Virus record (IMG/VR): IMGVR_UViG_3300048625_000299
Location: 62,001 to 126,000 of that record
Direction: 5' to 3' (one strand)
DNA: 64,000 nt
The notes under the pieces were generated by a model that was not told the origin of the DNA, searched no databases, and saw only the letters and a list, made by a program, of their open reading frames with translations. Below, one piece after another: positions 17,347 through 29,650 of the stretch. Positions within the stretch are counted from its first letter, which is position 1. The number at the start of each line of letters is the position of its first letter. Position numbers and translations under genes: made by a program.

Positions 17347-18497
17347 GCGATGCAGTAAGTATTCCTCCTTCTCTTAGAAGGATATTTGGTCCTAATCTTT
17401 ACCGAGGACGGTCGCGTGGTGCTACAGCTCGAAAGCGCCGACGCAGTCAACGAGTAATTAAGAATTGGGTGTGGGATGTAAGCGAAATGGACAAACGAAA
17501 AATGGAACAAGGCAGTAAAGACGTATTTTTAGGTGCAACAGATGTTGCCGATTTCATTACCAGTGAGTTGCACTTTGCTCGCAACGAGCAACGACTGGAG
17601 ACATATCACCGTGAAGTCACTGTGCTTGCGCAGCGTACTGAATGGTTGAAGTTCTTGATCAACGACGGCAGTCGTCTAGTTCAAATGTCGAGCACAAGTG
17701 GATTTTTGATTCAGGATGAGCTGATCTCATTCTTGTCATATGACATTCAATCATCTTCGATTGTCCTCAAACTAACAGGGGACAAAGAGTGCGTAGCAAG
17801 ATGGTACGAGTCTATCGTCGAGCTGTTTGAGGAAGTTACAAACACAATTGAGTGGATGTACAGTTCAGATGGCAATAGCATTGAAGTGCCAATCCGCAGC
17901 GACCGTAAACCTATCGATGAGATGTATCCGTTCTTGGGTGAACGTACGCTGGAAAGTTACTACACATCCTTCTTGGAATCTAGTGCTTCGATTCTGTTGT
18001 TGATTGGCCCTCCAGGTACAGGCAAGACTACGTTCATCCGCGGTCTCTTGCAACACGCAGACACAAGCGCCATGGTAACATATGATGCTGGTATCCTGGC
18101 CAAGGATTACATCTTCGCTCAATTCATCGAAGGTGATAAGAACATCATGGTGATTGAGGATGCTGATAACTTCTTGGGTGCGCGCTCAGATGGTAACGAC
18201 ATGATGCATAAGTTCCTGAACGTCGGTGATGGTCTGGTGACCACTAAAGGCAAGAAGCTGATCTTCTCGACTAACCTGCCTTCAATCAAGGACGTCGATC
18301 CTGCGCTGATCCGCCCAGGTCGTTGTTTTGATATTGTTCACTTCGGGCAGATGGATGGCGAGCAGGCTGCGAAGCTGGCTGAAAAGTTGGGCCTCGAGTA
18401 TGAAATTAAACTAGATGGTAAGTACAGCGTGGCTGACATCTTCCACAAGCAAGTGGAAGCACCGAAGGCACCCAAACGTCGCCTGGGCTTTGTATGA
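17343..18497 (+). CDS. AAA+ ATPase
   Basis: GPPGTGKT, VIEDAD, STN, ALIRPGRCFD (SRH). Confidence 0.92.
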   Translation: MSDAVSIPPSLRRIFGPNLYRGRSRGATARKRRRSQRVIKNWVWDVSEMDKRKMEQGSKDVFLGATDVADFITSELHFARNEQRLETYHREVTVLAQRTEWLKFLINDGSRLVQMSSTSGFLIQDELISFLSYDIQSSSIVLKLTGDKECVARWYESIVELFEEVTNTIEWMYSSDGNSIEVPIRSDRKPIDEMYPFLGERTLESYYTSFLESSASILLLIGPPGTGKTTFIRGLLQHADTSAMVTYDAGILAKDYIFAQFIEGDKNIMVIEDADNFLGARSDGNDMMHKFLNVGDGLVTTKGKKLIFSTNLPSIKDVDPALIRPGRCFDIVHFGQMDGEQAAKLAEKLGLEYEIKLDGKYSVADIFHKQVEAPKAPKRRLGFV

Positions 18498-18661
18498 TGA
18501 GCAACACTGGCTGGACCATTGTTCTGGAGGAAGACGAGAGTGGTGAGTTGATCCTCCCACTTCCTCCAGATCTACTCGAACAAGCCGGCTGGGTCGAGGG
18601 TGACACAATTATATGGAGTGTGCAAGAGGATGGGAGCATCCTCTTGTCGAAGAAGCGATGA
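18494..18661 (+). CDS. 55-aa AbrB/MazE-like swapped-hairpin protein (not in ORF track)
   Basis: GELILPLPPDLLEQAGWVEGDTIIW; ATGA overlaps at both ends. Confidence 0.75.
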   Translation: MMSNTGWTIVLEEDESGELILPLPPDLLEQAGWVEGDTIIWSVQEDGSILLSKKR

Positions 18662-18867
18662 CAGAAGAATTTTTGAAAGAAGTGTTCGACACTATTAAGC
18701 AAGCCCGGTGCAACAGGGCAGTATACACGACCCACGATCAAGGAATCATGCTCAGTGTGAAAGAAGAGCTGCTCAAGGAGCTAAAACAAAAATGGCCGCA
18801 AGAAGCGGCCATGTTAAGTACGACTGTGGTGAGTCGAGATTTTAGTGGTCGCCTAACCAGTCTTTGA
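18658..18867 (+). CDS. hypothetical protein
   Basis: Coupled to the previous stop. Confidence 0.55.
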   Translation: MTEEFLKEVFDTIKQARCNRAVYTTHDQGIMLSVKEELLKELKQKWPQEAAMLSTTVVSRDFSGRLTSL

Positions 18868-19171
18868 AAGAGCGGACTGGAGTAGTAATGGAGACTTCTT
18901 CGTTGGTCTTCTTCTTGCTCTTATCGTTGCTATGGATCCAAGAAGTGAAAGCTTTTGTGCGGCCCCACTTATTACCTTGAGGTAGTTTGGTTTTTGTACG
19001 AGTTTCCTGGCCAGTATTCTTATTGATAGACCAGTGCAATCCTTTTGCATTCTTGTGGCCCTCTTGCGACATCGCTATCTGAAGTTTCTCAGCATGGGTA
19101 TGCTTATGGCCTTCGAAGTTCGACTTGCCGGCCATTGTTCTTGAGATCTTTTTACGTGTTGCTAAATCCAT
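18842..19171 (-). CDS. basic NUMOD3-like protein without a nuclease domain
   Basis: KISRTMAGKSNFEGHKHTHAEK; CTAAATA upstream. Confidence 0.65.
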   Translation of the reverse strand: MDLATRKKISRTMAGKSNFEGHKHTHAEKLQIAMSQEGHKNAKGLHWSINKNTGQETRTKTKLPQGNKWGRTKAFTSWIHSNDKSKKKTNEEVSITTPVRSFKDWLGDH

Positions 19172-19190
19172 GGTATTCGTCCAAAAGTTG

Positions 19191-19218
19191 TTGTCAGTTG
19201 TCCTATATTTAGTATAAT
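19191..19218. promoter_or_regulatory. overlapping divergent promoters: sigma70 on + (TTGTCA...TATAAT) and late CTAAATA on - (19206-19212)
   Basis: Motifs visible in the 54-bp divergent gap. Confidence 0.6.
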
Positions 19219-19225
19219 TCGAATC

Positions 19226-19972
19226 ATGGATATCACATCATCATTACTTCAAGCAGCTTTTGCTACGCTCGCTTCTACAACTGTCACATTGACGGATACT
19301 GATTCCTATCAGTTTAATCCCAGCATGTCGCAAGTTGAGGGGTGTAAGCGCGCAGAAGAAAAGACCAAAGTTAAGCTGATCCAAAAGGTATATGGTCAAG
19401 ATTTTGGATCAGATTCTTCAATGACTTGTCGGGAAACTGACAGACACCAGTGCTCGTCTTTAACTAATACGTACGAGAATTCGCGTGGTTACATTCAGGC
19501 GATCAAATCACGCACGGAAAAGGTTGAAGGTTGGACGTGTACAGTCAGCATCACTGCGGATGTCAACGTAATCAAGAAGACTAAGTCGAATATTGATGCA
19601 TCAGCACAACTCGATCGCGTAGTGTATTTGCCAACGGATGCAGCAGACATCACTGTGAAGACCAACACCAAAGGTTTGGTTAGTGTATTCCAGTACGATC
19701 CAGTTGAAGATGTAGTAACCAAAGTGTTCCCAGCAGGTCGTAGTGGTCGCACGTGGACATACTTCGACCAGCCACTCAATGTCCGTGTATCCCTGCAAGG
19801 TCTGCAAGAGCGAGACATGCCATATTACTTCTTCATCACAGTCACCGATGTCCCAATCGATATGCTAGACCAATATCGTTTGCACAATTTCTACCAGATG
19901 TGGGATAATCAGCCAAACAAAGACAAATCCCTTGTTCGTAAATCATTTAACATTGCTAGGAGCAAATTGTGA
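19226..19972 (+). CDS. probable exported protein (partner of the lipoprotein)
   Basis: Hydrophobic N-terminus, 4 Cys, beta-rich C-terminal domain. Confidence 0.7.
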   Translation: MDITSSLLQAAFATLASTTVTLTDTDSYQFNPSMSQVEGCKRAEEKTKVKLIQKVYGQDFGSDSSMTCRETDRHQCSSLTNTYENSRGYIQAIKSRTEKVEGWTCTVSITADVNVIKKTKSNIDASAQLDRVVYLPTDAADITVKTNTKGLVSVFQYDPVEDVVTKVFPAGRSGRTWTYFDQPLNVRVSLQGLQERDMPYYFFITVTDVPIDMLDQYRLHNFYQMWDNQPNKDKSLVRKSFNIARSKL

Positions 19973-20673
19973 AGAAAATTTTATCATGCCTCGCCCTGAT
20001 TGCATTAGTCGGTTGTTCATCGACCGGCGTTAAGATCGCAGAAGGCAACAAAACAATCGAAACTACCAAACCACCGACGGTCGATATGCCAGCATGGTAT
20101 CTCGAGGTGCCTCGTGAGGATGGTGCGATCTATGCAACAGCGACTGAGACATCCACAGACTTGCAGTTCAGTATCGACCGCGCATTGATGTCTGCTAAGC
20201 GTGAGATCGCATTTAAGCTCGAGAACGAAGTTTCTCAAAAGTTCCGCGACTACACTGCTGAGACTGGCAGTGGCGAATCTGAAACGATTACCAAGGACAC
20301 TGAGCGCTTGACAATTTCCAATTCGAAGTTCGTCAACCTCGTTGGAGTTGAACGTATGCGCACTCATGTTGTCCGTGAAGGCAACCGATATCGTGCATTC
20401 GTGATGGTTCGATATGGATTGGATGCATCGAACCGCATTCATGCAAACTATATGGCCAAGCATCGCCAGCGTGATGCGCGTGAGCGTCTGGACAAGTTCG
20501 AAGAAGAGCTGAAGAGCGATAGGGGCAATCCTCAGTCTAAAGCTGAGCCTGCCAAGGCCGATACCAGCACAACATTGATCGGTACACAAGTGCAGGATGC
20601 TGCAGTACGGGATAGGGTGCAACGCGTCTATAATGATCCTAATGCTGTCGTGATTCGTGATACGGTGCGCTAA
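19969..20673 (+). CDS. LPP20-like lipoprotein
   Basis: Lipobox LVGC; PAWY; ALMSAKREIA. Confidence 0.8.
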   Translation: MKKILSCLALIALVGCSSTGVKIAEGNKTIETTKPPTVDMPAWYLEVPREDGAIYATATETSTDLQFSIDRALMSAKREIAFKLENEVSQKFRDYTAETGSGESETITKDTERLTISNSKFVNLVGVERMRTHVVREGNRYRAFVMVRYGLDASNRIHANYMAKHRQRDARERLDKFEEELKSDRGNPQSKAEPAKADTSTTLIGTQVQDAAVRDRVQRVYNDPNAVVIRDTVR

Positions 20674-20950
20674 TGGTTAAAGAGTTCTACTTCTATTTGG
20701 ACGCGTGGTGGTACTGTAAAGAACACAAGATCAAACCAAGCACAATTCAACGATATGATTGGCGTCGATGGATTGTGGTGATACCAACCAAACGAAAGAA
20801 ACCAAATGCAAAACGGGTTTGAGGAATGGGCACATACCTGTATTACTGAGTTGGTAATCAATACAAACTTGACTACCAATCAGATTCGTGAATTGTTTTT
20901 GAATGCTTTTCCTGAGTATGAATATGTGATGGAAGAGGTCCTTATGGAGA

Positions 20951-21406
20951 ATGGCTATGCTTTGGGAAATTAAAACTGCTGAGAAAAAGAACGCATATCA
21001 ACGTACATACTATGATGTACCAGCTGGCCAGCCAGGCGCCGGTAAGCGATTCATCATGGATGAATGGTATCGTTGGGGTTGGTGTACTGTACGGACGGAT
21101 GTGGAGCCAAGAGCAGATGGCGACGACCCACATGAGAACCCACTTGACCTAGGCGATTTCGATCTCGAAGACAACAATATGGATGATGGTTGTTCTCTGT
21201 CATTTGAGTATCCTGAATCTGAGAATTGGACCGACGAAGAGATTGCATACATCGAAGGCCTGTGGGAACAAGATGGTTGGCTTGCGTTCGAAGAGAATGG
21301 CATTGAGGCTGGCGACTGTGATATTTTATATTACGGCCCTCTCGAAGTTACATGCATCGATGCAACCCCAGAACAACCAAAGGCCAAAGGCACTTGGCCA
21401 TTCTAA
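20951..21406 (+). CDS. acidic hypothetical protein
   Basis: 151-aa ORF with GGAG upstream. Confidence 0.7.
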   Translation: MAMLWEIKTAEKKNAYQRTYYDVPAGQPGAGKRFIMDEWYRWGWCTVRTDVEPRADGDDPHENPLDLGDFDLEDNNMDDGCSLSFEYPESENWTDEEIAYIEGLWEQDGWLAFEENGIEAGDCDILYYGPLEVTCIDATPEQPKAKGTWPF

Positions 21407-21423
21407 GTTTTTATTGTATAATC
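21395..21423 (+). promoter_or_regulatory. sigma70 promoter TTGGCC-17-TATAAT
   Basis: Perfect -10 with TG extension. Confidence 0.7.
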
Positions 21424-21446
21424 GTCGGATTGAATAAAGGAATGCA

Positions 21447-21983
21447 ATGATCGACGCAGTTTATGTTCTTGGTAAGATGGGCTTGAAGCCTGGTATGTCT
21501 GTTTCACGCGCAATCACGGCTGTCGGGATTGCAATTAATGACAGTTCCGACCAGTTGAAAGCAGCAAACCGAATCATTGTATCACTTGGTGCGAAGCCAG
21601 TCAGCAATACAATCATGGCCGACATCTTTGCCAAGGCATTAGTGGAACAGGCCGTTGTCCAAGGTGCTAGCTATGATGCTGACGATGCATTTGAGGTTGC
21701 GAATGCAAAGTATCTCAAAATCGAACGGACAATGCCATTCGTGTTCGCAGGTAGCGGTGAAAGCACCACGCCAGTATATGGCACGCCTGTTGGAAATGGT
21801 GGCACTAAGAAGCCAAAACAAACAAACGACAAGAAGACACAAGCTCTTGAAATTTTCAATCGCGAGACCAGTAAGGGGTTGCCTAATTCCACAATTGCGC
21901 AGACAATTGCTACTGAGTTAGAAATCACACTGTCCAACGCCCAATACTACGTCAATCGTGTATTCGTAAAGTACTCCAAATGA
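21447..21983 (+). CDS. protein with C-terminal HTH-like domain
   Basis: C-terminus paralogous to 16461-16625. Confidence 0.75.
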   Translation: MIDAVYVLGKMGLKPGMSVSRAITAVGIAINDSSDQLKAANRIIVSLGAKPVSNTIMADIFAKALVEQAVVQGASYDADDAFEVANAKYLKIERTMPFVFAGSGESTTPVYGTPVGNGGTKKPKQTNDKKTQALEIFNRETSKGLPNSTIAQTIATELEITLSNAQYYVNRVFVKYSK

Positions 21984-23320
21984 AAATTCTCAGCATCCTC
22001 GACACGTTGGCCAATGATAATGGCCGCAACTTCAAGATTGATTACTTGACAAAGCACAAGGACAATCTCCTGCTCACACAAGTAGTGTTCTTGGCACTTG
22101 ACACATACACACAATTCTTCATTCGCAAGATTCCTGCATATACACGTGGCCCTGACACTGCAAATCTGAAGTGGGCTCTTGATAAACTATGCGATCTTTC
22201 TTCTCGTACTGTGACAGGCAATGCTGCAATCGCTCATCTTGTGAAGATCTTGGAATCTCTTGAACCAGATGATGCTCAGGTAGTTGAGCGCATCATTGAA
22301 AAAGACTTGAAGTGTGGTGTGGCAGCTTCGACCGTCAATAAGGTATGGCCTAATTTGGTCCACGAATACCCATGCATGCTTGCTAGTCCGTATGAGGAAA
22401 AGCTGGTCAACAAGATTCAATTTCCAGCATACGCGCAATTGAAAATGGACGGGATGCGATTCAATGCCATCGTCAAAAATGGCAAATGTGAGTTCCGCAG
22501 TCGTAATGGTAAATTGATCGACATCCCGTCCGACCTATTCCAACAACCATTCCTCAACATGCATGAGTACTGGGGCACCGATATGGTGTTCGATGGTGAG
22601 TTGCTTGTTGTCGATGTCGCTGGCAAGCCGCTCGATCGCAAGACTGGCAACGGCATCTTGAACAAAGCTGTTAAGGGCACAATGTCTGAGGAAGAAGCTG
22701 TTAATGTTCGTGCAACATTGTGGGACGCACTTCCGGTTGAGAATTTTGCGGTTGGCGTATACAAAGAACAGTACATCGATCGTATTGCTAAGCTATCTAA
22801 TGCGTTGTCACATATGCGTAATCAAACGCCTTTTGGTCACTTGGTTGCTCTAGTGAACCACACAGAAGTTCGTACTCCCGAAGATGCTTCACGTCTATTC
22901 CTCCAGTACCTCAAAAAGGGCGAGGAAGGAATCATCTTGAAAGATCGTTTTGGTATTTGGGAAGATAAGCGTGCCAAGCACCAGATCAAATACAAGGGCG
23001 TGTTTGAGTGCGATTTGGTCTGTGTTGGATGGGATGAGGGTACCGGTCAGAACGTAGGTCGCCTTGGTGCATTGCAGCTGGCTTCGTCATGTGGCAAGCT
23101 GACTGTCGGTGTTGGTACTGGTCTTACCGAAGAAGACCGAATCAATATCGGACGTGATGTAATCGGTAAAGTTGTTGCTGTTGAATTCAACGCAATCATC
23201 GACGATAAGAAAAAGGACACTAAGTCGCTATTTCTTCCGGTGTTTATATGTGTGCGACCGGATAAGGACGAAGCAGACTCACTCACGACTATCGAGAGTA
23301 GTGTAGTAAAACTCCTTTGA
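21980..23320 (+). CDS. ATP-dependent DNA ligase (T4 gp30-like)
   Basis: QLKMDGMR, FDGEL, EGIILK, QIKYK, LFLPVF. Confidence 0.96.
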   Translation: MKILSILDTLANDNGRNFKIDYLTKHKDNLLLTQVVFLALDTYTQFFIRKIPAYTRGPDTANLKWALDKLCDLSSRTVTGNAAIAHLVKILESLEPDDAQVVERIIEKDLKCGVAASTVNKVWPNLVHEYPCMLASPYEEKLVNKIQFPAYAQLKMDGMRFNAIVKNGKCEFRSRNGKLIDIPSDLFQQPFLNMHEYWGTDMVFDGELLVVDVAGKPLDRKTGNGILNKAVKGTMSEEEAVNVRATLWDALPVENFAVGVYKEQYIDRIAKLSNALSHMRNQTPFGHLVALVNHTEVRTPEDASRLFLQYLKKGEEGIILKDRFGIWEDKRAKHQIKYKGVFECDLVCVGWDEGTGQNVGRLGALQLASSCGKLTVGVGTGLTEEDRINIGRDVIGKVVAVEFNAIIDDKKKDTKSLFLPVFICVRPDKDEADSLTTIESSVVKLL

Positions 23321-23944
23321 TCTAGTCTTGAGCCAGTAGTTCATGGTACCATGCACCACACCATAGTCAATCGCAGCCGATTTTACTGAGGGATATTTGC
23401 CGCGCGGGGTCATTATAGGGCGACGCTTCTTTAAGCCTTCTGATCTAATGTCGTGTCTTGTGAAGGCCTTGGACGATTTCCGCTTAGCCCATGGTTTTGA
23501 AGGGTCCTTCATCCAATTGTGGATTGTTGTTATGTCGACGCCATAATGTTTGGCTGCAGCTTTGCGAGATTCGAACACGATACCATCTGGCGAGATGAGT
23601 TGTTTTACTGGACCTCTACTACCTAACGCATACCGATTGCCAATTGCTGTTGGTGGCTTAGTTCCACCTTTGTTGATATTCCAACCGATGCATGGATGCG
23701 GCCTTAGCTGCTCCTCAAACGCATAGCATTCGTGTTCTGGTCCTTCTTTGATATACTCTATAATGAGGTCTTCGTCGATATTATATGCTCGTTGAAAGTG
23801 AAGGTTGTCATGCTTGCCATTGCGTAGCTTAGTTTTGTGGTTTGCAATCCGTCTGGTTGGATTGTTCGTTACGCCAATATACCCCTCCGTCATAAAATCT
23901 GACATATTGGTGTGGCGTATCCAGTATACGTAGTGGTTTGTCAT
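23279..23944 (-). mobile_element. free-standing GIY-YIG (Seg-like) homing endonuclease with two NUMOD1-like HTH repeats
   Basis: YVYWIR...GYIGVT, GWNINKGG; AAGGAG SD; TATAAATA late promoter at 23963-23970. Confidence 0.88.
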
Positions 23945-23974
23945 TGCAGTTCTCCTTGTGAATATTTATAAAAC

Positions 23975-24049
23975 ATAGAAGTGCGAGAAGACAAGACCAC
24001 TGCTGATGCGCTAGAAGACATCCAAACATTCAGTCCAAAGATGTTGTAA
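23975..24049 (+). pseudogene. stranded duplicate of the ligase C-terminus (IEVREDKTTADALEDIQTFSPKML*)
   Basis: 11/24 ungapped identity to the current ligase tail, same distance to stop. Confidence 0.8.
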
Positions 24050-24071
24050 TATTTCGTTTTTGTGGTATAAT
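24044..24071 (+). promoter_or_regulatory. sigma70 promoter TTGTAA-16-TATAAT with extended TG
   Basis: Perfect -10. Confidence 0.65.
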
Positions 24072-24094
24072 AATCACATCGAAAGGAAAACGCA

Positions 24095-24595
24095 ATGTCT
24101 CATACACTGTTTAAAGTCTCTGGTCCAAACACGAAGCTCGTATACTACGGCTATGCAAAAACCGGAAACGAACAAGCAACGTTCATGGGTGGTTGTTTGC
24201 GTACAGACAATGAAAAGCGTGGCGATGCTCGTTTGCTCGAAGCGAATGATAATGATGCTGCGTCTTTGGAATTCACCATGCTCTGTGAGTATGAGGAAGA
24301 ATTCGAAGCGTGGACTGCTCGCAACGACAATCGTGCTGCTGATGCATGTTCGATCACTGGTCCAACAATGTTTCCAATCGAAAGCGCTCGCCGTGCCGCC
24401 AAAGAGTTCCCAGAAGTACTCAGCGCTTGGAAGCTTCGCATGAAACAAAAGGAAGCGAAGACTGCGTTGGAAGCATACCAGCTTGGCGCATATACGTTCC
24501 CTCAAATCAAAGAGTTGAACGCAAAGCATGCTGGTGTGATGAAGCAAATGGAAGTACTGACTCCATTGGAATTTGCGAATCTCTATGGGATTTAA
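24095..24595 (+). CDS. hypothetical protein, possibly a degenerate GIY-YIG fold
   Basis: TLFKVSGPNTKLVYYGYA resembles the GIY-YIG hairpin; AAAGGA SD. Confidence 0.65.
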   Translation: MSHTLFKVSGPNTKLVYYGYAKTGNEQATFMGGCLRTDNEKRGDARLLEANDNDAASLEFTMLCEYEEEFEAWTARNDNRAADACSITGPTMFPIESARRAAKEFPEVLSAWKLRMKQKEAKTALEAYQLGAYTFPQIKELNAKHAGVMKQMEVLTPLEFANLYGI

Positions 24596-24719
24596 GGAAT
24601 GGTTGGAGTCGCTACAGCCACGCAGAGAACATACGTCAGGCGAAGATCTGGCGGACTCTATCGCGTTGTTTGTGATATGTGGTCTGCTGTATTTGTGTAT
24701 ATTTCTATAAGGAATCTGT

Positions 24720-25329
24720 ATGTCAGGATGGCGTAAGAATCAAATCGCTGATCAAGTCAATAAGGACAATGTTGTTGACCTCGGCGCGGTGCTGAGAGCG
24801 AAGCTTGAGAAGGCTATTGAGGATGAGGAACGCAAGAAGAAGATCCTTCGTCCAAAATACATGACCAAACAACAGATCATGGATATGCACCCCCTTGATG
24901 TGTATATGAATATACGCAGTGGTGAGTGGGCAATTGAAGATTTTGTTGCTTGGGTTGTTGTTTGTGAAAATGCCGCATACATCGCCGGCGCAGAGGATAC
25001 ATTATGAAAACATTCATCATCGGTACAGTGTTTGGGATTGTTCTAACTACTGTTGGATTTTCTGGTCTCGCTCGAATCTTCGACAATGGTGTCGTTAAAG
25101 TCCAACAAGTAACTAAAGAAGCTGCACAATGAAATCTGGAATTGACCTTGAACTGAGCCTGGAACAGACGGGCGTAGTTGTTGTGGAAGAGTTGAAAGTG
25201 ACTGTTGAAATCAACAGCACATATGAAGACCAACGATCGAAGGATATCGTCAAAGCAGCTGAGCTGTTGCTCAGCTATTATATGGCGCCAGACGAACACC
25301 GAAAGTACTTGGAACAAAAATCCAGTTGA
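24720..25329 (+). other. small hypothetical ORFs (24720-25007, a short TM ORF, 25129-25329)
   Basis: Coupled co-oriented ORFs. Confidence 0.55.
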
Positions 25330-25410
25330 CTTCGTAGCACGGACCCTATATAATTAACCCACTGCTAAAGATAGACTTTAGCAGGCCAACTATTCAAAGG
25401 AGCTTTGAAT
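25326..25410 (+). promoter_or_regulatory. sigma70 promoter TTGACT-17-TATAAT plus two-hairpin leader (GATAGAC-loop hairpin; SD/AUG hairpin)
   Basis: CTGCTAAAG-ATAGA-CTTTAGCAG; ATTCAAAG-GAG-CTTTGAAT. Confidence 0.85.
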
Positions 25411-26428
25411 GTCAAAAAAATACGACACTCTCGTCCTCATCGGACGCTTTCAACCGTTTCATAACGCTCACCTTGAGATCATCAAGCGTAGCACTGCGCT
25501 CTGTAATAAACTGATTGTTATTACGGGCAGCGCAAAACAGCCTCGCACATACAAGAATCCGTTCACCAGCTTTGAACGCGAGATGATGATCAAGCGTGCG
25601 ACTGCAGGTCTCGCATTGACTATCAATGTCGTCGAAAACATCGACACAATCTACAACGACCAAGCCTGGGCTGTCCGGATACAATCCATCGTGAACACAT
25701 TGGCATGCGACGGTGATAAGATCGGCATCATCGGCCACAAGAAAGATGACAGCTCATTCTACTTGGATATGTTTCCGCAATGGGGATATGAGAACGTCGA
25801 AGAGATTGCACCGCTGAGTGCTGTCAATATTCGCGACCTGTACTTCAAGCGCAACTGTAATCTCGAATTCATTCGCGGGGTGGTACCTCAAACTACTTTC
25901 GAAATCTTGCTGGACTTCAAGCAAAGCGAAGAGTATGAACAAATCATCCGTGAGCGCGAGTTCGTAGAGAACTACAAAAAGCAGTACGCATCGCTTCCAT
26001 ATCCTCCAATCTTCAGTACTGCTGATGCTGTAGTGATCCAATCCGGCCATGTGCTGATGATTCGTCGTCGTGCTGAGCCAGGCAAAGGGTTGTGGGCGCT
26101 TCCCGGCGGATATGTGAACGCAAATACCGACAAGTCTGTTGAAGCTGCAATGCTCCGAGAGCTCCGCGAAGAAACAAAGATCAAAGTTCCCGAGCCAGTC
26201 CTGCGTGGTAATATCGTTCGCAGTAAGGTGTTCGATGCTGTCGATCGTAGTCCTCGTGGCCGCATTATCACTCATGCATTCCACATTCAGTTGCCAGACG
26301 GCGAGCTGCCAAAGGTCAAAGGATCTGATGATGCTGAAAAGGCACGTTGGGTTCCGATTGCTGAAGTGAAGAGCGAAGACTGCTTCGAAGACCACTTTGA
26401 AATTCTCCAACACTTTTTGGGAGCTTAA
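25409..26428 (+). CDS. natV: bifunctional NMN adenylyltransferase / ADP-ribose Nudix hydrolase (NadM-Nudix, NatV-like)
   Basis: GRFQPFHNAH, KNPFT, Nudix box GG...RELREET, GSDDA. Confidence 0.95.
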   Translation: MSKKYDTLVLIGRFQPFHNAHLEIIKRSTALCNKLIVITGSAKQPRTYKNPFTSFEREMMIKRATAGLALTINVVENIDTIYNDQAWAVRIQSIVNTLACDGDKIGIIGHKKDDSSFYLDMFPQWGYENVEEIAPLSAVNIRDLYFKRNCNLEFIRGVVPQTTFEILLDFKQSEEYEQIIREREFVENYKKQYASLPYPPIFSTADAVVIQSGHVLMIRRRAEPGKGLWALPGGYVNANTDKSVEAAMLRELREETKIKVPEPVLRGNIVRSKVFDAVDRSPRGRIITHAFHIQLPDGELPKVKGSDDAEKARWVPIAEVKSEDCFEDHFEILQHFLGA

Positions 26429-26748
26429 AATGTCAGACGGACTAGATCGTTCGGGGCTAGAATGGTTCAATGAACGTGGCTATTGGGTAATCCGAAAGGT
26501 CCCCAATACCAAAGACCAATTCTATGTTGCTAGTACAGCAATTCCACCAGACAATGTTCTGAAAATTTATGGGATATTGTGATGGGATGGACTGACTGGA
26601 ATTGGATTAACGTTGCGCTTGTCTTCGTGAATGGAGCAGTAGCGTATGATTGTTTCGCTGATAAGGACGTCGATCGTTCTTTCGGTGGTTGGGTGAACGT
26701 GGTTGCTAGTTCTATGAACACTGCAATGATTGCAATAAAGGTTTTGTA

Positions 26749-26943
26749 ATGGTACGAATTATCGATGCAACACCACATCAGAGTGTGGTCAAAAAGAAGG
26801 TCTGCCGTCACTGTGGCGTGACGTTGGAGTATGTTCCTAACGACATTCAAGAACGACGAGTTACTGATTATGATGGCAGTAGCGAGCTGATCAAGTACAT
26901 CGAGTGTCCTGCTTGCAAAACACACGTTGATGTGAGGTACTAA
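26749..26943 (+). CDS. small zinc-ribbon protein
   Basis: CRHCG...CPAC. Confidence 0.7.
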   Translation: MVRIIDATPHQSVVKKKVCRHCGVTLEYVPNDIQERRVTDYDGSSELIKYIECPACKTHVDVRY

Positions 26944-26944
26944 T

Positions 26945-27889
26945 ATGTGGAAAAATGTAAACGTCTTTGAAGATGAAAAAGAGCACGTTAAGAAGTATGT
27001 TTTCGAGAAAGATGACATCGCTATCGAGTCCGTTCTTTATCGTTATCCTACTTACGATGAACGCACTGTTCTCTGCATTAGTACCATGTGCGGATGTCCA
27101 ATGGGCTGTCGCTTTTGTGGAACTGGTGATTATTTTGTTCGTAGCCTTACTGCGGATGAAATTGTAGGCCAAGCTGAATACATCCTCGAAACACAAATCG
27201 GCGGACTGAATCCTCGTGACATCAAGAAGTTGCAGATCATGGTGATGAGTATGGGCGAGCCTGCTTTGAACAAAGCTCTGGAAGAAGCATTCGATCGTCT
27301 GTATGCAAAGTACCCAAATGCAGCACTGCTGATTAGCTCAAGCGGTCCTAAGGTTAGCTACCAATGGATCATCGAAATGAGCAAGCGGATTCCGACTGTC
27401 GGTTTGCAATTCAGCATTCACGAGAGTACAGACGAAGCACGCGACAAGTTGATTCCATTCGATAAGAAGTTGAACCTGCAAGAGATTGCTGATGTTGGCG
27501 TTCGCTGGCACTTGGATACTGGCCGTAAGCCATATTTCAACTATTGCGCTCACGAGGGCAACGATAAAGATGAGGACGTCCAACGACTACTCAAGTTGTA
27601 CCATCCACGCATCTGGGAAGCGACTGTCTCTGTCATTTGTGAACGCGATGCTCATGCAGAAGCAACGAACGACAAGCAACGCAACTTGGCTATTGAATTT
27701 GGTAACAAGCTGCTTGCTGAAGGTTACAACGTCCGTGTGTTCGATCCGGCTGGTCAGGATACAATCGGTGGTGGTTGTGGTCAGTTGTGGTATGTTCAAG
27801 ACTGGATGAAGGACCATCCAGAGCACGTCAAGCCATCTGTTGGTTGTGGTATGCAAAAGGTCCACACACCAAAAGAATGGAACGTATGA
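26945..27889 (+). CDS. RlmN/Cfr-family radical SAM methyltransferase, N-terminally shortened
   Basis: LCISTMCGCPMGCRFCGTG, MSMGEP, FSIH, GQDTIGGGCGQL. Confidence 0.9.
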   Translation: MWKNVNVFEDEKEHVKKYVFEKDDIAIESVLYRYPTYDERTVLCISTMCGCPMGCRFCGTGDYFVRSLTADEIVGQAEYILETQIGGLNPRDIKKLQIMVMSMGEPALNKALEEAFDRLYAKYPNAALLISSSGPKVSYQWIIEMSKRIPTVGLQFSIHESTDEARDKLIPFDKKLNLQEIADVGVRWHLDTGRKPYFNYCAHEGNDKDEDVQRLLKLYHPRIWEATVSVICERDAHAEATNDKQRNLAIEFGNKLLAEGYNVRVFDPAGQDTIGGGCGQLWYVQDWMKDHPEHVKPSVGCGMQKVHTPKEWNV

Positions 27890-28677
27890 AGTTTTTGATC
27901 CAATACAATCTAATGGCAGAGTCGCAACTCGAAGCAGTTAAGTCTGCAGCTCTGCCATATCCTCACCAGTATGTTGGAGTGATTCCGTTTTCAAATGAGA
28001 TCACCGCAGCAGAGGGTGAAGAGATTGTTGGTACCGATTACATTCCATATGGGTCAACGCTGATGTCGACGATTGGCCTAGATTTGGGATGGAAGGGATT
28101 GCACTTCGATCTCGAACAGTTCAATTACGAAGCTGCAGTCGCCAATCGGGATGATATGCTGAATGATGGCGATATTATGACTGTCGAAGAGACTATCGAT
28201 TTCATGCGCGCCAGCACTCAAGAACAATGGTTCATCCGTCCTTCACTCGATCTGAAGCATTTTGCTGGGCAGGTAATCGAACGCATAGAGTGTGTGAAGT
28301 GGTTAACACAAGCACTCGGTTGTTCATCATCTGAGACGAAACGGATGTACAAAGACATGAAGATTGTCGTTGCAACACCACAAAACATTCAAGCCGAATG
28401 GCGTTGGTTTGTGGTCGGAGGCAAAGTGGTCGATGGGTCAATGTACCGCTCACATGGTCAATTGATCAAGCTGCATGAGACTGATCCAAAAGTAATCGCT
28501 GAAGCACAAACGTTTGCTGATAAGTGGTTGCCAAACCAAAACGTCGTGATGGACTTGGCGCTTGTCGATGATGAATTGAAGGTAATTGAATTCAACTGTA
28601 TCAACTGCAGTGGGTTCTACAATCACGATGTTCGTAAAATATTTGATGCACTGTATATGGAGAGTACAAAATGCTAA
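27886..28677 (+). CDS. ATP-grasp protein (R2K/DUF4343-like)
   Basis: FIRP...KHFAG, EWRWFVV, MDLA, IEFNCINCSGFY. Confidence 0.82.
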   Translation: MKFLIQYNLMAESQLEAVKSAALPYPHQYVGVIPFSNEITAAEGEEIVGTDYIPYGSTLMSTIGLDLGWKGLHFDLEQFNYEAAVANRDDMLNDGDIMTVEETIDFMRASTQEQWFIRPSLDLKHFAGQVIERIECVKWLTQALGCSSSETKRMYKDMKIVVATPQNIQAEWRWFVVGGKVVDGSMYRSHGQLIKLHETDPKVIAEAQTFADKWLPNQNVVMDLALVDDELKVIEFNCINCSGFYNHDVRKIFDALYMESTKC

Positions 28678-29156
28678 AGCATGTAAAAGGCAACTTACTC
28701 GATCTAGCTGAGGCTGGTCATTTTGATGTGGTTGTTCAAGGCTGCAATTGCTTCAACGCAATGGGCGGAGGGATCGCACGTGAGATTCGCGAGCGCTATC
28801 CAGTAGCCGCGGCCGCTGACAATAAGACTGTTAAGGGCGATTACAATAAGCTGGGCAATTGGACCAGCTGCCCAATAATTGTCGGAGACTTGGGCTATGT
28901 TTCTAGCTTCGTTATCATCAACGCATACACTCAATATAATATGAGCACTGGTCAAGATGTGTTCGAGTATGCAGCGTTTGAGCTGATCCTCCAAAAGCTA
29001 CTCTACACGTATGGAGATAAGCGAATTGGATTTCCGTTCATTGGTATGGGCCTTGCCCGTGGTGATAAGCAACGAATCATCGGAATGCTTGAATGGTTTG
29101 CAGATGAAATTGAGAAGCGTGGCGGTAGTGCAACGCTAGTGGAATTCCAGCCATGA
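28671..29156 (+). CDS. macrodomain ADP-ribose processing protein
   Basis: GNLL, GCNCFNAMGGGIA, NAYTQ, PFIGMGLARG. Confidence 0.9.
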   Translation: MLKHVKGNLLDLAEAGHFDVVVQGCNCFNAMGGGIAREIRERYPVAAAADNKTVKGDYNKLGNWTSCPIIVGDLGYVSSFVIINAYTQYNMSTGQDVFEYAAFELILQKLLYTYGDKRIGFPFIGMGLARGDKQRIIGMLEWFADEIEKRGGSATLVEFQP

Positions 29157-29650
29157 ACATAGTCAAGTCCCCAAACGAGTATACCACTCGCAATAAATTC
29201 TCAATCTTCCTTGCTGGATCAATTGAGATGGGCATGGCGGTAGATTGGCAACAATCGATCGCTGATGCGTTGTATGGCATTGATGGAATACAGCTACTGA
29301 ACCCACGTCGTGATGATTGGGATTCTAGCTGGGCACAAACGATCGAGAATCCACAATTTGCTGAGCAAGTAAGATGGGAGCTGACAGCACTCGAACGATC
29401 TGATTTGATCATCTACTACTTTGCACCAGGCACACAAAGTCCAATCTCGTTGCTTGAGCTGGGACTCTATGCAAACCATACAAAGAACATCTGGGTGTGT
29501 TGTCCAGAAGGATTCTGGCGTAAGGGCAATATCGAGATCGTCTGCCAACGATACATGATTCCATTCTTTGATGATTTAGATCACATGGTGGACGATCTGA
29601 GGTACTATCTTCCGATTTGGACGGAAGATGGATATGAGCAGTTGACATAA
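29153..29650 (+). CDS. nucleoside 2-deoxyribosyltransferase-like protein
   Basis: IFLAGSI, NPRR, QVRWE, SPISLLELG. Confidence 0.88.
   Translation: MNIVKSPNEYTTRNKFSIFLAGSIEMGMAVDWQQSIADALYGIDGIQLLNPRRDDWDSSWAQTIENPQFAEQVRWELTALERSDLIIYYFAPGTQSPISLLELGLYANHTKNIWVCCPEGFWRKGNIEIVCQRYMIPFFDDLDHMVDDLRYYLPIWTEDGYEQLT

What the first reader, a model, noticed from the sequence alone, without database searches (positions are those of the whole stretch)
23245..24049. Homing endonuclease inserted in the ligase 3' end carries a replacement C-terminus; the original tail is stranded
Seen: the ligase ends ICVRPDKDEADSLTTIESSVVKLL*. Just beyond the inverted GIY-YIG gene and its TATAAATA promoter, the + strand encodes IEVREDKTTADALEDIQTFSPKML* (23975-24049). 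It has the same length, 11/24 identity and no start codon. The stranded copy looks more like the T4 gp30 tail (REDK). The new tail overlaps the endonuclease gene antisense by 42 nt. Established: free-standing phage endonucleases target conserved neighbouring genes. Inference: non-splicing invasion of an essential gene, with a recoded tail that restores the ligase and destroys the target site. The predicted target lies near the junction ...CCGGTGTTT/ATAGAAGTGCGAGAAGAC.
Basis: partly seen in the sequence, partly recalled or inferred. Interest (0 to 1): 0.72.

Follow-up and report, generated by a model that had tools for sequence, protein, structure and literature searches.

The report
Homing endonuclease cassette swaps ligase tail
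A selfish endonuclease gene sits inside the end of this phage's only DNA ligase gene, brings its own substitute ligase ending, and leaves the original ending as an untranslated remnant; the same cassette recurs in several related phages, a way of invading an essential gene so far described for fungal mitochondria.

Summary
A 730-nt cassette (window 23246-23975) lies inside the coding sequence for ligase motif VI (RxDK). It holds a 24-codon replacement ligase tail, an antisense GIY-YIG endonuclease gene (221 aa) that overlaps that tail by 42 nt, and an RBS with a TATAAATA late-promoter-like box.

- **Empty site found.** A relative with 95% identical ligase (L003) lacks the cassette. Its ligase ends in the sequence stranded at 23975-24049 (23/24 aa, 72/75 nt). 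A contig in run X7 shows the same empty site.
- **The cassette recurs.** Six homologous endonucleases (56-76% identical) from other phage contigs all sit at the same ligase codon. Each has a related cassette-borne tail and a lineage-specific stranded native tail, from intact to badly decayed.
The new tail travels with the endonuclease rather than being recoded in place. Its equal length to the old tail is a coincidence caused by a 7-nt insertion.
- **No sign of an intron.** There is no Rfam match and no unusual RNA fold.

Cleavage of the empty allele, self-immunity and activity of the hybrid ligase are inferred, not shown. The closest known parallel is the mobile endonuclease ORFs of fungal mitochondria. 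I found no phage precedent in the held literature.

The parts
21980..23245 (+). Body of the ATP-dependent DNA ligase (T4 gp30-like), shared with the endonuclease-free relative up to codon ...LFLPVF
   Evidence: Pfam DNA_ligase_A_M 5e-21, OB_2, A_N. Aligns to the T4 ligase structure 6DT1, 2.8e-60 (L003 query). Collinear with L003 4001-5266 without gaps. It is the only ATP ligase in the genome, and there is no NAD ligase.
23246..23975 (.). The inserted cassette (730 nt; the right boundary is ambiguous by 1 nt because the relative has a T where the window has A at 23975)
   Evidence: Absent from L003. The X7 contig joins 23245 to 23976 with one T between.
23246..23320 (+). Cassette-borne replacement ligase tail ICVRPDKDEADSLTTIESSVVKLL*. 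It keeps R..DK of motif VI. The last 13 codons and the stop are antisense to the endonuclease 3' end
   Evidence: Homologous tails in six other cassettes. Over the first 39 nt it is closer to the L086 and L090 cassette tails (27 and 25 of 39) than to its own stranded tail (22 of 39).
23279..23944 (-). Free-standing GIY-YIG homing endonuclease gene (221 aa): N-terminal catalytic domain plus two HTH-like repeats
   Evidence: Pfam PF01541, 29.3 bits over cut-off. Family profile matches the I-TevI catalytic domain 1MK0 at 5e-4. Residues I read as the catalytic motifs (YWI, GYxG, RR, H, E, N) are invariant in 12 homologs. pN 0.14-0.32 against pS 0.60-0.87.
23952..23957 (-). Ribosome-binding site AAGGAG, 7 nt upstream of the endonuclease ATG
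   Evidence: Read. A GGAG core is present at the equivalent place in all six homologous cassettes.
23963..23970 (-). TATAAATA, a T4-type late-promoter-like box at the right end of the cassette
   Evidence: Only copy in the window. The genome has a gp55 homolog. ATAAATA sits within 60 nt upstream of long ORFs 20 times out of 31, against 2.6 expected. Variants occupy the same place in all homologous cassettes.
23975..24049 (+). Stranded native ligase tail IEVREDKTTADALEDIQTFSPKML*, with an in-frame stop just upstream, no ATG, and no ORF of 25 aa or more in its frame
   Evidence: 72/75 nt and 23/24 aa identical to the functional tail of L003. Aligns with T4 ligase motif VI, LREDK.
24044..24071 (+). 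Sigma-70-like promoter (TTGTAA, 16 nt, TG-TATAAT) for the downstream gene. Its -35 hexamer is the last two codons of the stranded tail
   Evidence: consensus match 10/12 with extended -10. Also present in L003. Function is inferred.
24095..24595 (+). Downstream gene (166 aa, no Pfam family). Together with the stranded tail it forms the right-hand homology flank
   Evidence: 100% aa identity to L003 5387-5887. pS 0.13, pN 0. No family found.

Best explanation
This is a mobile homing-endonuclease cassette that has invaded the phage's only DNA ligase gene inside the codons for catalytic motif VI (RxDK). It survives there without an intron or intein because it carries its own substitute ligase C-terminus.

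The cassette (23246-23975) consists of three parts:
- a foreign ligase tail fused in frame after ...LFLPVF;
- a convergent GIY-YIG endonuclease gene whose 3' end is co-encoded antisense with that tail;
- the endonuclease's own RBS and a late-type promoter box.

The native tail is pushed downstream and is no longer translated.

Proposed life cycle (inferred). Late in a mixed infection the endonuclease cuts ligase alleles that lack the cassette, at or near the conserved motif VI sequence. Repair copies the cassette from the donor. The ligase body serves as the left homology arm, and the stranded motif VI head plus downstream DNA serves as the right arm. Both junctions in the carrier differ from the intact target, so the carrier is immune. 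The hybrid ligase keeps R, D and K of motif VI, so it should still work.

Shown here: the insertion polymorphism, the exact empty site, recurrence of the same architecture at the same codon in seven phage lineages, purifying selection on the endonuclease, and decay of stranded tails in older insertions.

Inferred: cleavage specificity, immunity, late timing of expression, and activity of the hybrid ligase.
For: **Empty site.** L003 (ligase 95% aa identical, sister with 100/100 support) lacks the cassette and ends in the stranded sequence. The X7 contig shows the same joint. The carrier allele occurs in at least three further data sets: L002, X1 and X3.

**Recurrence.** Homologs P0002, P0003, P0006, P0008, P0010 and P0013 (56-76% identical) all lie convergent to a ligase 3' end and overlap it by 11-31 nt. 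In each, the ligase switches after LFLPxF/Y to a cassette-type tail such as ICIRPDKDYADSLEDIK* or VCIRDDKDYADTSDLIK*. Beyond a TATAAATA-like box lies a stranded native head (x-E-x-R-x-DK) that differs by lineage:
- intact in L086 and L095;
- internally deleted in L083 and L092;
- mutated with a premature stop in L090;
- interrupted in L094.

**Mobility.** On the ligase tree, built with tails removed, carriers are scattered and well-supported branches force at least 4 gains or losses. Endonuclease identity equals or exceeds ligase identity in 20 of 21 carrier pairs, for example 56% against 40%.

**Function.**
- The GIY-YIG domain scores over the Pfam cut-off.
- The family profile matches I-TevI.
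- The residues I read as catalytic motifs are invariant.
- pN is far below pS.

**Target.** The junction lies 3 codons before the R of motif VI, mapped on T4 ligase. T4 R465/D467/K468 are motif VI residues (PMC6212786), and RxDK acts in ligase adenylylation (PMC4609770).

**Tail kept functional.** RxDK is kept in 7/7 cassette tails but only 5/7 stranded heads. The tail is the end of the sole ligase in the genome.

**Target altered in carriers.** The E codon present in 58/60 unique endonuclease-free sequences (the two exceptions look like mis-registered rows) is replaced in 5/7 cassette tails. The Arg and Lys codons are also mostly different.
Against: - No enzymology: the cut site, the specificity and the immunity of the junctions are untested. 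T4 Seg-type free-standing endonucleases can cut away from their insertion site (PMC2988022), so the target need not be exactly at the junction.
- The hybrid ligase replaces a Glu that is otherwise conserved (58/60 unique sequences) with Cys and puts Pro inside RxDK. This copy also has a 7-nt insertion that rewrites the last residues of both proteins. Activity of either protein in this particular phage is therefore not guaranteed.
- Synonymous sites between cassette endonucleases are saturated. Transfers between the sampled lineages are old, and no ongoing homing was seen.
- The seven cassettes share ancestry, so the codon contrasts are descriptive and not independent tests.
- The RNA-library contig does not prove transcription.
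- TATAAATA itself is not enriched in the genome: 10 copies in 235 kb.
Confidence: 0.85

Rival explanations
1. The endonuclease is a mobile free-standing gene, but its target is elsewhere (a distant site in the ligase or a neighbouring gene, as for T4 Seg enzymes). On this view the duplicated tail is a by-product of one illegitimate recombination that was then inherited. It would not be an adaptation giving immunity and preserving ligase function.
For: Free-standing T4 endonucleases cut at a distance from their insertion sites (PMC2988022, read). No cleavage data exist for this enzyme. Cassette tails share descent, so one founding accident could explain their common features.
Against: The left and right junctions fall at the same codon in seven lineages whose stranded tails are lineage-specific. 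This needs repeated insertion at the same site, not one inherited accident. Carriers are scattered on the ligase tree. The site is the most conserved stretch of the ligase tail.
Confidence: 0.1
2. The cassette is ancestral to this group of phages. The endonuclease-free state of L003 and X7 arose by precise loss, so the window shows an old resident rather than a recent invasion.
For: The next ligase lineage out (L086) also carries the cassette, so one gain plus one loss is as parsimonious as two gains for that sub-clade. The cassette endonucleases of the window and L086 are saturated at synonymous sites.
Against: Loss would have to be exact to the nucleotide and would have to restore a tail that had been a pseudogene. 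The stranded tail differs from the working L003 tail at only 3 of 75 nt, 2 of them synonymous, so it shows no decay. Older insertions (L083, L090, L092) do show decay. All 78 other IMG/VR relatives lack the cassette. Even if true, this changes only the timing, not what the element is.
Confidence: 0.1
3. The insert is a self-splicing intron (or is otherwise removed from the mRNA), so the native tail at 23975-24049 is still the real ligase C-terminus.
For: Precise removal of 23246-23974 would rejoin ...PVF to IEVREDK... in frame. Many phage GIY-YIG endonucleases are intron-encoded.
Against: No Rfam family at E up to 1 in 22800-24400 on either strand. The RNA fold is no more stable than shuffles, z = -0.81. 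The endonuclease is on the opposite strand. The cassette tail is an in-frame ligase-like sequence that keeps RxDK in all seven cassettes, while stranded tails are deleted or carry stops in L083, L090 and L092. That is incompatible with their being the used exon. The only skipping contig is a 90%-identical relative, not a spliced form of this phage.
Confidence: 0.02
4. The ligase has been inactivated by the insertion, and the phage relies on the host ligase. The 'replacement tail' would be meaningless read-through.
For: Cys replaces a Glu that is conserved in nearly all endonuclease-free relatives, and Pro sits inside RxDK. The last 11 residues of this copy are read from the antisense of the endonuclease gene after a 7-nt insertion.
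Against: R, D and K of motif VI are kept in all seven cassette tails despite saturated synonymous divergence of the cassettes. The ligase body between the window and L003 shows pN 0.013 against pS 0.40. Full-length ligase ORFs are intact in every complete carrier locus. Residues after RxDK are variable and short in this ligase group.
Confidence: 0.05

Closest known systems
Mobile endonuclease ORFs (mORFs) of fungal mitochondria that create hybrid genes with a C-terminal duplication. Examples: Allomyces macrogynus atp6; Glomus atp6, atp9, cox2, nad3; Rhizopus atp9; Mortierella cox2 (PMC3630166, which cites Paquin et al. 1994)
   Same: A foreign C-terminal piece of the host gene is inserted in frame together with an endonuclease ORF. 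The native C-terminus is displaced downstream. The native piece is nearly identical to that of the close relative lacking the element, while the inserted piece is divergent. Here the figures are 36/39 against 21-22/39 nt and 72/75 nt.
   Different: The host here is a virus of bacteria and the target is DNA ligase motif VI. The endonuclease is on the opposite strand and is co-encoded antisense with the new tail, whereas in the Glomus cases the ORF lies downstream of the inserted piece on the same strand (in phase with the gene in atp6 and nad3). This cassette carries its own phage late-type promoter. Seven lineages with graded decay of the stranded tail give a time series.
T4 Seg-type free-standing GIY-YIG endonucleases and 'intronless homing' (PMC2988022)
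   Same: A GIY-YIG catalytic domain with C-terminal DNA-binding modules. The gene is free-standing in a T4-like replication gene cluster (regA, clamp loader, uvsX and polB neighbours in relatives). It shows presence/absence polymorphism between close relatives and has a late-type promoter.
   Different: Seg genes sit between genes and do not rebuild the target gene. This one is inserted inside a coding sequence and supplies a replacement end. Its sequence is only remotely related to T4 enzymes; the best phage-database matches are 26-40% identical over partial length.
Endonuclease insertions that split essential phage genes: mobE in Aeh1 nrdA, mobA in the T4 topoisomerase gene, seg43(25) in gene 43 of Aeromonas phage 25 (PMC2988022)
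   Same: A free-standing endonuclease lies inside a functionally critical region of an essential replication gene, without an intron or intein.
   Different: In those cases both gene halves are translated and reassemble. Here the downstream piece has no start and is replaced by a cassette-borne copy, and in older insertions it decays.
I-TevI, the intron-encoded GIY-YIG endonuclease of the T4 td gene
   Same: The best structural-family match for the catalytic domain (1MK0, E = 5e-4), with a weak match to its DNA-binding domain (Pfam PF20987 E = 0.0016). I-TevI's late promoter is overlapped by a homing-site-like operator (PMC2988022). Here half of the presumed homing site abuts the TATAAATA box.
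   Different: There is no intron around this gene. Autorepression here is only a conjecture.

Membership tests
GIY-YIG homing endonuclease (I-TevI / Seg-like) | GIY-YIG catalytic domain with the conserved Tyr, Arg, Glu and Asn residues | tested here: met
   PF01541 at 29.3 bits against a cut-off of 22.6. Family profile against I-TevI 1MK0, E = 5e-4. Y7 W8 I9, G21 Y22 G24, R31 R32, H36, E77, N89 and N91 are invariant in 12 homologs; their assignment to catalytic roles is my reading.
GIY-YIG homing endonuclease (I-TevI / Seg-like) | C-terminal sequence-tolerant DNA-binding modules joined by a linker | tested here: inconclusive
   PF20987 (I-TevI DNA-binding) E = 0.0016 at 18.7 bits, below its cut-off of 27. 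1I3J E = 0.083. Two internally similar HTH-like repeats are visible in alignment A1.
GIY-YIG homing endonuclease (I-TevI / Seg-like) | Presence/absence polymorphism at a fixed site between close relatives | tested here: met
   L003 and the X7 contig lack it at the exact site. The same site is occupied in six other lineages.
GIY-YIG homing endonuclease (I-TevI / Seg-like) | Site-specific cleavage of the endonuclease-free allele and preferential inheritance in mixed infection | not testable with these tools
   The protein-DNA prediction was not folded by the tool. This needs enzyme assays and co-infection.
Group I intron with an internal endonuclease gene | Ribozyme core flanking the ORF on the host gene's strand; splicing restores the reading frame | tested here: not met
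   No Rfam match at E up to 1. Fold z = -0.81. The ORF is antisense. The in-frame cassette tail ends in a stop. No spliced joint appears for this phage in the RNA-library contigs.
Mitochondrial-type mORF hybrid gene (Allomyces atp6 type) | A foreign C-terminal segment is inserted in frame and an endonuclease ORF is co-inserted | tested here: met
   The orientation of the ORF differs (antisense).
Mitochondrial-type mORF hybrid gene (Allomyces atp6 type) | The native C-terminus is displaced downstream and stays close to that of the element-free relative, while the inserted one is divergent | tested here: met
   Stranded tail against L003: 72/75 nt. Inserted tail against L003: 21/39 over the first 13 codons.
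ATP-dependent DNA ligase, T4 gp30 type | Nucleotidyltransferase domain with KxDGxR, OB domain, and motif VI RxDK near the C-terminus | tested here: met
   Pfam domains. KMDGMR is seen in the translation. Alignment to 6DT1 through LREDK. The hybrid has VRPDK.
Split 'genes-in-pieces' (Aeh1 nrdA type) | Both fragments keep translation signals and are expressed as separate polypeptides that assemble | tested here: not met
   The stranded tail has an in-frame stop two codons upstream, no ATG, and no ORF of 25 aa or more in its frame. Its counterparts are deleted or carry stops in L083, L090 and L092.

The most novel reading that the evidence does not exclude
The stranded motif VI head may be a working part of the element rather than junk. 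Its first seven codons (x-E-x-R-x-DK) persist next to the endonuclease promoter in all seven lineages, even where the rest of the tail is deleted or interrupted.

It could serve two roles. First, as a near-universal right homology arm that lets the cassette home into ligase genes of distantly related phages; L095 carries an extra EEIRSDK fragment that looks like a piece brought from a previous host. Second, as an operator at which the endonuclease represses its own late promoter, as I-TevI does.

More broadly, 'bring your own gene end' cassettes may be an unrecognised general route by which free-standing endonucleases colonise catalytic motifs of essential phage genes.
Probability: 0.3. Interest if true: 0.75.

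Novelty: new variant of a known kind. Interest (0 to 1): 0.62.

Why it matters
Homing endonucleases are thought to need an intron, an intein, a tolerated gene split or an intergenic site in order to live next to essential genes. This locus shows a fourth solution in phages, and it recurs in at least seven lineages. The element carries a substitute end for the gene it interrupts, and that end is co-encoded on the opposite strand of its own gene. The design is the one described for fungal mitochondrial mORFs, so it appears to have arisen independently in two very different genetic systems.

The case has three practical consequences:
- It warns annotators that a phage gene's last exon-like stretch may be foreign, and that short conserved 'orphan' frames beside endonuclease genes may be displaced gene ends.
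- It supplies a natural series, from intact to decayed stranded tails, for dating invasions.
- It gives an exact empty site and two junctions for testing specificity and self-immunity of a new GIY-YIG enzyme that recognises ligase motif VI DNA.

Tried and rejected
- **Megablast against GenBank phages:** no match. tblastn there gave only distant ligases (at most 42%) and partial endonuclease matches, so no cultured relative is available.
- **Endonuclease search in IMG/VR:** found only this phage's own second contig. The homologs came from the large protein collection instead.
- **Single-sequence search of PDB:** only chance matches. The family profile was needed to reach I-TevI.
- **Degenerate DNA pattern for I-C-[VI]-R-P-D-K-D in IMG/VR:** 4 matches, of which 3 are unrelated non-ligase sequences.
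- **Complex prediction of the endonuclease with the empty-site DNA:** the tool did not fold it, so it gives no evidence either way.
- **More distant endonuclease homologs (28-43% identical; P0017, P0025, P0050):** these lie between structural genes on the same strand, not at ligases. The tail-swap design is therefore specific to the 56-76% clade, and I could not generalise it to other target genes.
- **TATAAATA as a genome-wide promoter:** the 8-mer is not enriched, with 10 copies in 235 kb. Only the 7-mer ATAAATA shows strand bias and positioning upstream of ORFs.
- **Co-conversion tract hugging the junction:** none is evident on the left (90-91% identity in the last 300 nt, like the rest of the ligase). 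Instead divergence steps down at the site.
- **Literature:** The held library is incomplete, so this is not proof of absence.
Full report
**1. The observation**

The window is bases 62001-126000 of a 234,864-bp IMG/VR virus record with direct terminal repeats.

- The ligase ORF runs 21980..23320 (+, 446 aa) and ends ICVRPDKDEADSLTTIESSVVKLL*.
- A 221-aa ORF on the opposite strand, 23279..23944, overlaps it by 42 nt.
- Pfam finds the ATP-ligase adenylation, OB and N-terminal domains in the first ORF. In the second it finds a GIY-YIG domain above the curated cut-off, plus a weak I-TevI DNA-binding match.
- Upstream of the endonuclease ATG lie AAGGAG (23952-23957, minus) and TATAAATA (23963-23970, minus). 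The latter is the only copy in the window.
- Window 23975-24049 (+) reads IEVREDKTTADALEDIQTFSPKML*. An in-frame TAA lies two codons upstream.

Every element of the finding is there.

**2. The decisive comparison**

IMG/VR holds 80 loci with related ligases. L002 is a second contig of the same phage from another sample.

L003 has a 95% identical ligase and a 100% identical downstream protein, but no endonuclease. Its ligase is collinear with the window's up to ...SLFLPVF. It then continues LEVREDKTTADALEDIQTFSPKML*, a 45-nt spacer and the downstream gene.

The stranded frame in the window is therefore the native ligase end, 72/75 nt identical to a working copy. The insert is 23246 to 23974/5.

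An independent check came from laying public assemblies on the window. A 23.7-kb contig of a roughly 90% identical relative (run X7) joins 23245 to 23976 with a single T between. Contigs identical to the window, insert included, occur in X1, X2 and (in pieces) X3.

**3. It is a recurrent cassette, not a one-off**

The endonuclease has a family of full-length homologs at 56-76% identity. I fetched the contexts of six of them. In every case the gene lies convergent to a DNA ligase and overlaps its 3' end by 11-31 nt.

Read in the ligase direction, each ligase switches after LFLP-x-F/Y to a cassette-type tail. Beyond the endonuclease and a TATAAATA-like box, a stranded ligase head begins at the same codon.

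| Locus | Cassette-type tail | Stranded native tail |
|---|---|---|
| L086 | ICIRPDKDYADSLEDIK* | LEIREDKTTADALSKLL*, intact |
| L090 | ICVRVDKDHPDSLDEIK* | MEFWKDNRHTR*, mutated with an early stop |
| L092 | VCIRDDKDYADTSDLIK* | IEFCTDK.., internal deletion joining the head to ..KDIK* |
| L094 | VSFREDKDYADTSDLIK* | METRTDK + about 50 codons + DVADSGKDIK* |
| L083 | LEWRLDKDEADHSKDIK* | IEFRNDK.., internal deletion joining the head to ..KDIK* |
| L095 | CEFRLDKNTADSLQSIQDQFDNAIRA* | AEFRLDKKTADTLAQIQDQFDNAVKA*, preceded by a second fragment EEIRSDK |

The stranded tails thus differ by lineage, as the native end of each host would. They range from intact to badly decayed.

- Over the first 39 nt the window's new tail is closest to the cassette tails of L086 and L090 (27 and 25 matches). 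Its stranded tail is closest to L003 (36) and to L086's stranded tail (30).
- Five of the other six cassette tails are 17 aa and end in a double stop. The window copy has Lys changed to Glu and a 7-nt insertion that shifts the frame past those stops. This lengthens the ligase tail to 24 aa and also rewrites the last residues of the endonuclease.
The sequence is confirmed by identical contigs in X1 and X2.

**4. Evidence for mobility and for function**

- On a maximum-likelihood tree of 81 ligases, built with the tail removed, the five full-length carriers are scattered among endonuclease-free rows.
- Well-supported branches force at least four gains or losses, and the window is sister to endonuclease-free L003 with 100/100 support.
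- Endonuclease identity equals or exceeds ligase identity in 20 of 21 carrier pairs, for example 56% against 40% for the window and L095. This is the reverse of what vertical descent of a selfish gene beside an essential enzyme would give.
- The endonucleases are under purifying selection: pN 0.14-0.32 against pS 0.60-0.87, with synonymous sites saturated.
- Residues I read as the GIY, YIG, Arg, His, Glu and Asn positions are invariant, and there are two conserved HTH-like repeats.
- The family profile matches the I-TevI catalytic domain (1MK0, E = 5e-4) and, weakly, its DNA-binding domain.

**5. Where it sits in the ligase**

L003's ligase aligns with the T4 ligase structure 6DT1. The segment ...KSLFLPVFLEVREDKTTADALEDI matches T4 ...VKLFLPIAIRLREDKTKANTFEDV.

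- T4 Arg465, Asp467 and Lys468 in LREDK are motif VI residues (PMC6212786). The Arg and Lys of RxDK orient the pyrophosphate leaving group during ligase adenylylation (PMC4609770).
- The junction is three codons before that Arg, so the element has landed in one of the most conserved stretches of the protein.
- All 79 endonuclease-free ligase tails share LFLP-x-x-x-E-x-R-x-DK.
- All seven cassette tails keep R, D and K, while two of the seven stranded heads have lost them.
- The cassette tails replace the conserved Glu in 5 of 7 cases and mostly use AGR for Arg and AAG for Lys. The endonuclease-free genes mostly use CGN and AAA. Because the cassettes share ancestry, these contrasts are descriptive.
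- They do show that the carrier's left junction differs from the intact site at many positions. The right junction lacks the left half altogether.
- The genome has no other ATP-dependent ligase and no NAD-dependent ligase.

**6. Expression signals**

- The genome encodes a homolog of T4 late sigma factor gp55 (E = 1e-18).
- The core ATAAATA is strand-biased (31 against 6). It lies within 60 nt upstream of a long ORF in 20 of 31 plus-strand cases, against 2.6 expected.
- The full TATAAATA occurs only 10 times in the genome. Four of those precede endonuclease genes.
- Variants of the box occupy the same position in all homologous cassettes.

A late-type promoter carried by the cassette is therefore plausible but not shown.

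A sigma-70-like promoter for the downstream gene (24044-24071) uses the last two codons of the stranded tail as its -35 element. This may help to keep that end of the remnant.

**7. Not an intron**

- No Rfam family matches 22800-24400 at E up to 1.
- The plus-strand RNA of 23200-24060 folds no better than shuffles (z = -0.81).
- The endonuclease is antisense, and the decayed stranded tails in other lineages could not serve as exons.

**8. Timing**

Divergence between the window and L003, by segment:

| Segment | pS |
|---|---|
| Ligase body | 0.22-0.59 (0.38 in the last sixth) |
| Stranded tail | 0.13 (two synonymous-type changes, plus one at the junction codon) |
| Downstream gene | 0.13 (pN 0) |

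Overall identity is 84.7% over 5.3 kb to the left and 94.2% over 4.1 kb to the right. The insertion site therefore coincides with a step in divergence, which points to a recombination boundary. The stranded tail shows no excess decay, which fits a recent arrival in this lineage. The data are few.

**9. Mechanism proposed**

Shown: an insertion polymorphism at a fixed codon, a cassette-borne tail, recurrence in several lineages, and selection on the endonuclease.

Inferred: the enzyme cuts empty ligase alleles at or near the motif VI sequence during mixed infection. Double-strand-break repair then copies the cassette, using the ligase body and the stranded head plus downstream DNA as homology. 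The carrier is immune because both junctions differ from the target. The hybrid ligase works because RxDK is kept and the residues after it are short and variable in this group.

**10. Comparison with what is known**

The closest described parallel is in fungal mitochondria. There, mobile endonuclease ORFs insert together with a foreign C-terminal piece of atp6, atp9, cox2 or nad3 and displace the native piece, which stays nearly identical to that of the element-free relative (PMC3630166, citing the Allomyces atp6 case).

Among phages, the known ways for free-standing endonucleases to sit in or by essential genes are intergenic insertion (Seg and Mob), introns, and split genes such as Aeh1 nrdA and the T4 topoisomerase with mobA (PMC2988022). 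I found no report of a replacement-tail cassette in phages or at a ligase gene. The library searched is incomplete.

I therefore rate this as a new variant of a known kind.

Noticed in passing
window 17959-28046 compared with L003: Divergence from the endonuclease-free relative steps down exactly at the insertion site. Identity is 84.7% over 5.3 kb on the left and 94.2% over 4.1 kb on the right. pS is 0.38 in the last sixth of the ligase and 0.13 in the stranded tail and next gene. The endonuclease gene marks a recombination boundary, as reported for ICP1 phages (PMC10448857).
   Followed up: partly
window 23290-23320, compared with L083, L086, L090, L092, L094: This copy of the cassette has a 7-nt insertion (AGTAGTG or an equivalent placement) and a Lys-to-Glu change. 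Together these read through the double stop that ends the ligase tail in five of the other six cassettes. The last residues of both the ligase and the endonuclease are rewritten. Identical contigs in X1 and X2 confirm the sequence.
   Followed up: yes
L094:2552-2767 (minus strand of the locus): In this relative the stranded ligase tail is interrupted between ...TRTDK and DVADSGKDIK* by about 50 codons containing CPLCG...H...H. The whole is called as a 71-aa ORF that starts at the stranded head's ATG. It is either a second insertion or a small gene built on the remnant.
   Followed up: no
L095:1-185 (upstream of the endonuclease start): Two ligase motif VI fragments lie beyond the endonuclease: a short EEIRSDK piece, then a full stranded tail ..RFAEFRLDKKTADTLAQIQDQFDNAVKA*. 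This cassette's tail resembles its host's own tail (25/39 nt) more than other cassette tails. That suggests serial invasions, or gene conversion between the two copies.
   Followed up: partly
own genome C1:27155-27763, 28727-29389 and about 37314 (outside the window): There are three more endonuclease genes: two GIY-YIG genes in what looks like a tRNA gene cluster (reminiscent of T4 segB) and one HNH_3 gene. Each is preceded by TATAAATA, so 4 of the genome's 10 copies of that 8-mer precede endonuclease genes.
   Followed up: partly
window 24044-24071: The -35-like hexamer TTGTAA of the promoter-like site for the downstream gene is formed by the last two codons of the native ligase tail. It is conserved in L003. 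This may be a reason why the 3' end of the remnant is retained.
   Followed up: no
window 25409-26428: A 339-aa ORF whose translation shows a nucleotidyltransferase-type GRFQPFHNAH motif followed by a Nudix-box-like GGYV...LRELREETKI. It looks like an NMN adenylyltransferase/Nudix fusion of the kind known from large vibriophages. This is my reading of the sequence, not tested with a tool.
   Followed up: no
run X7 laid on window 21900-24700: A library labelled metatranscriptomic yields a 23.7-kb contig of the endonuclease-free relative at even depth. That looks like DNA carry-over rather than a transcript, so RNA-labelled runs here cannot be taken as evidence of expression.
   Followed up: no
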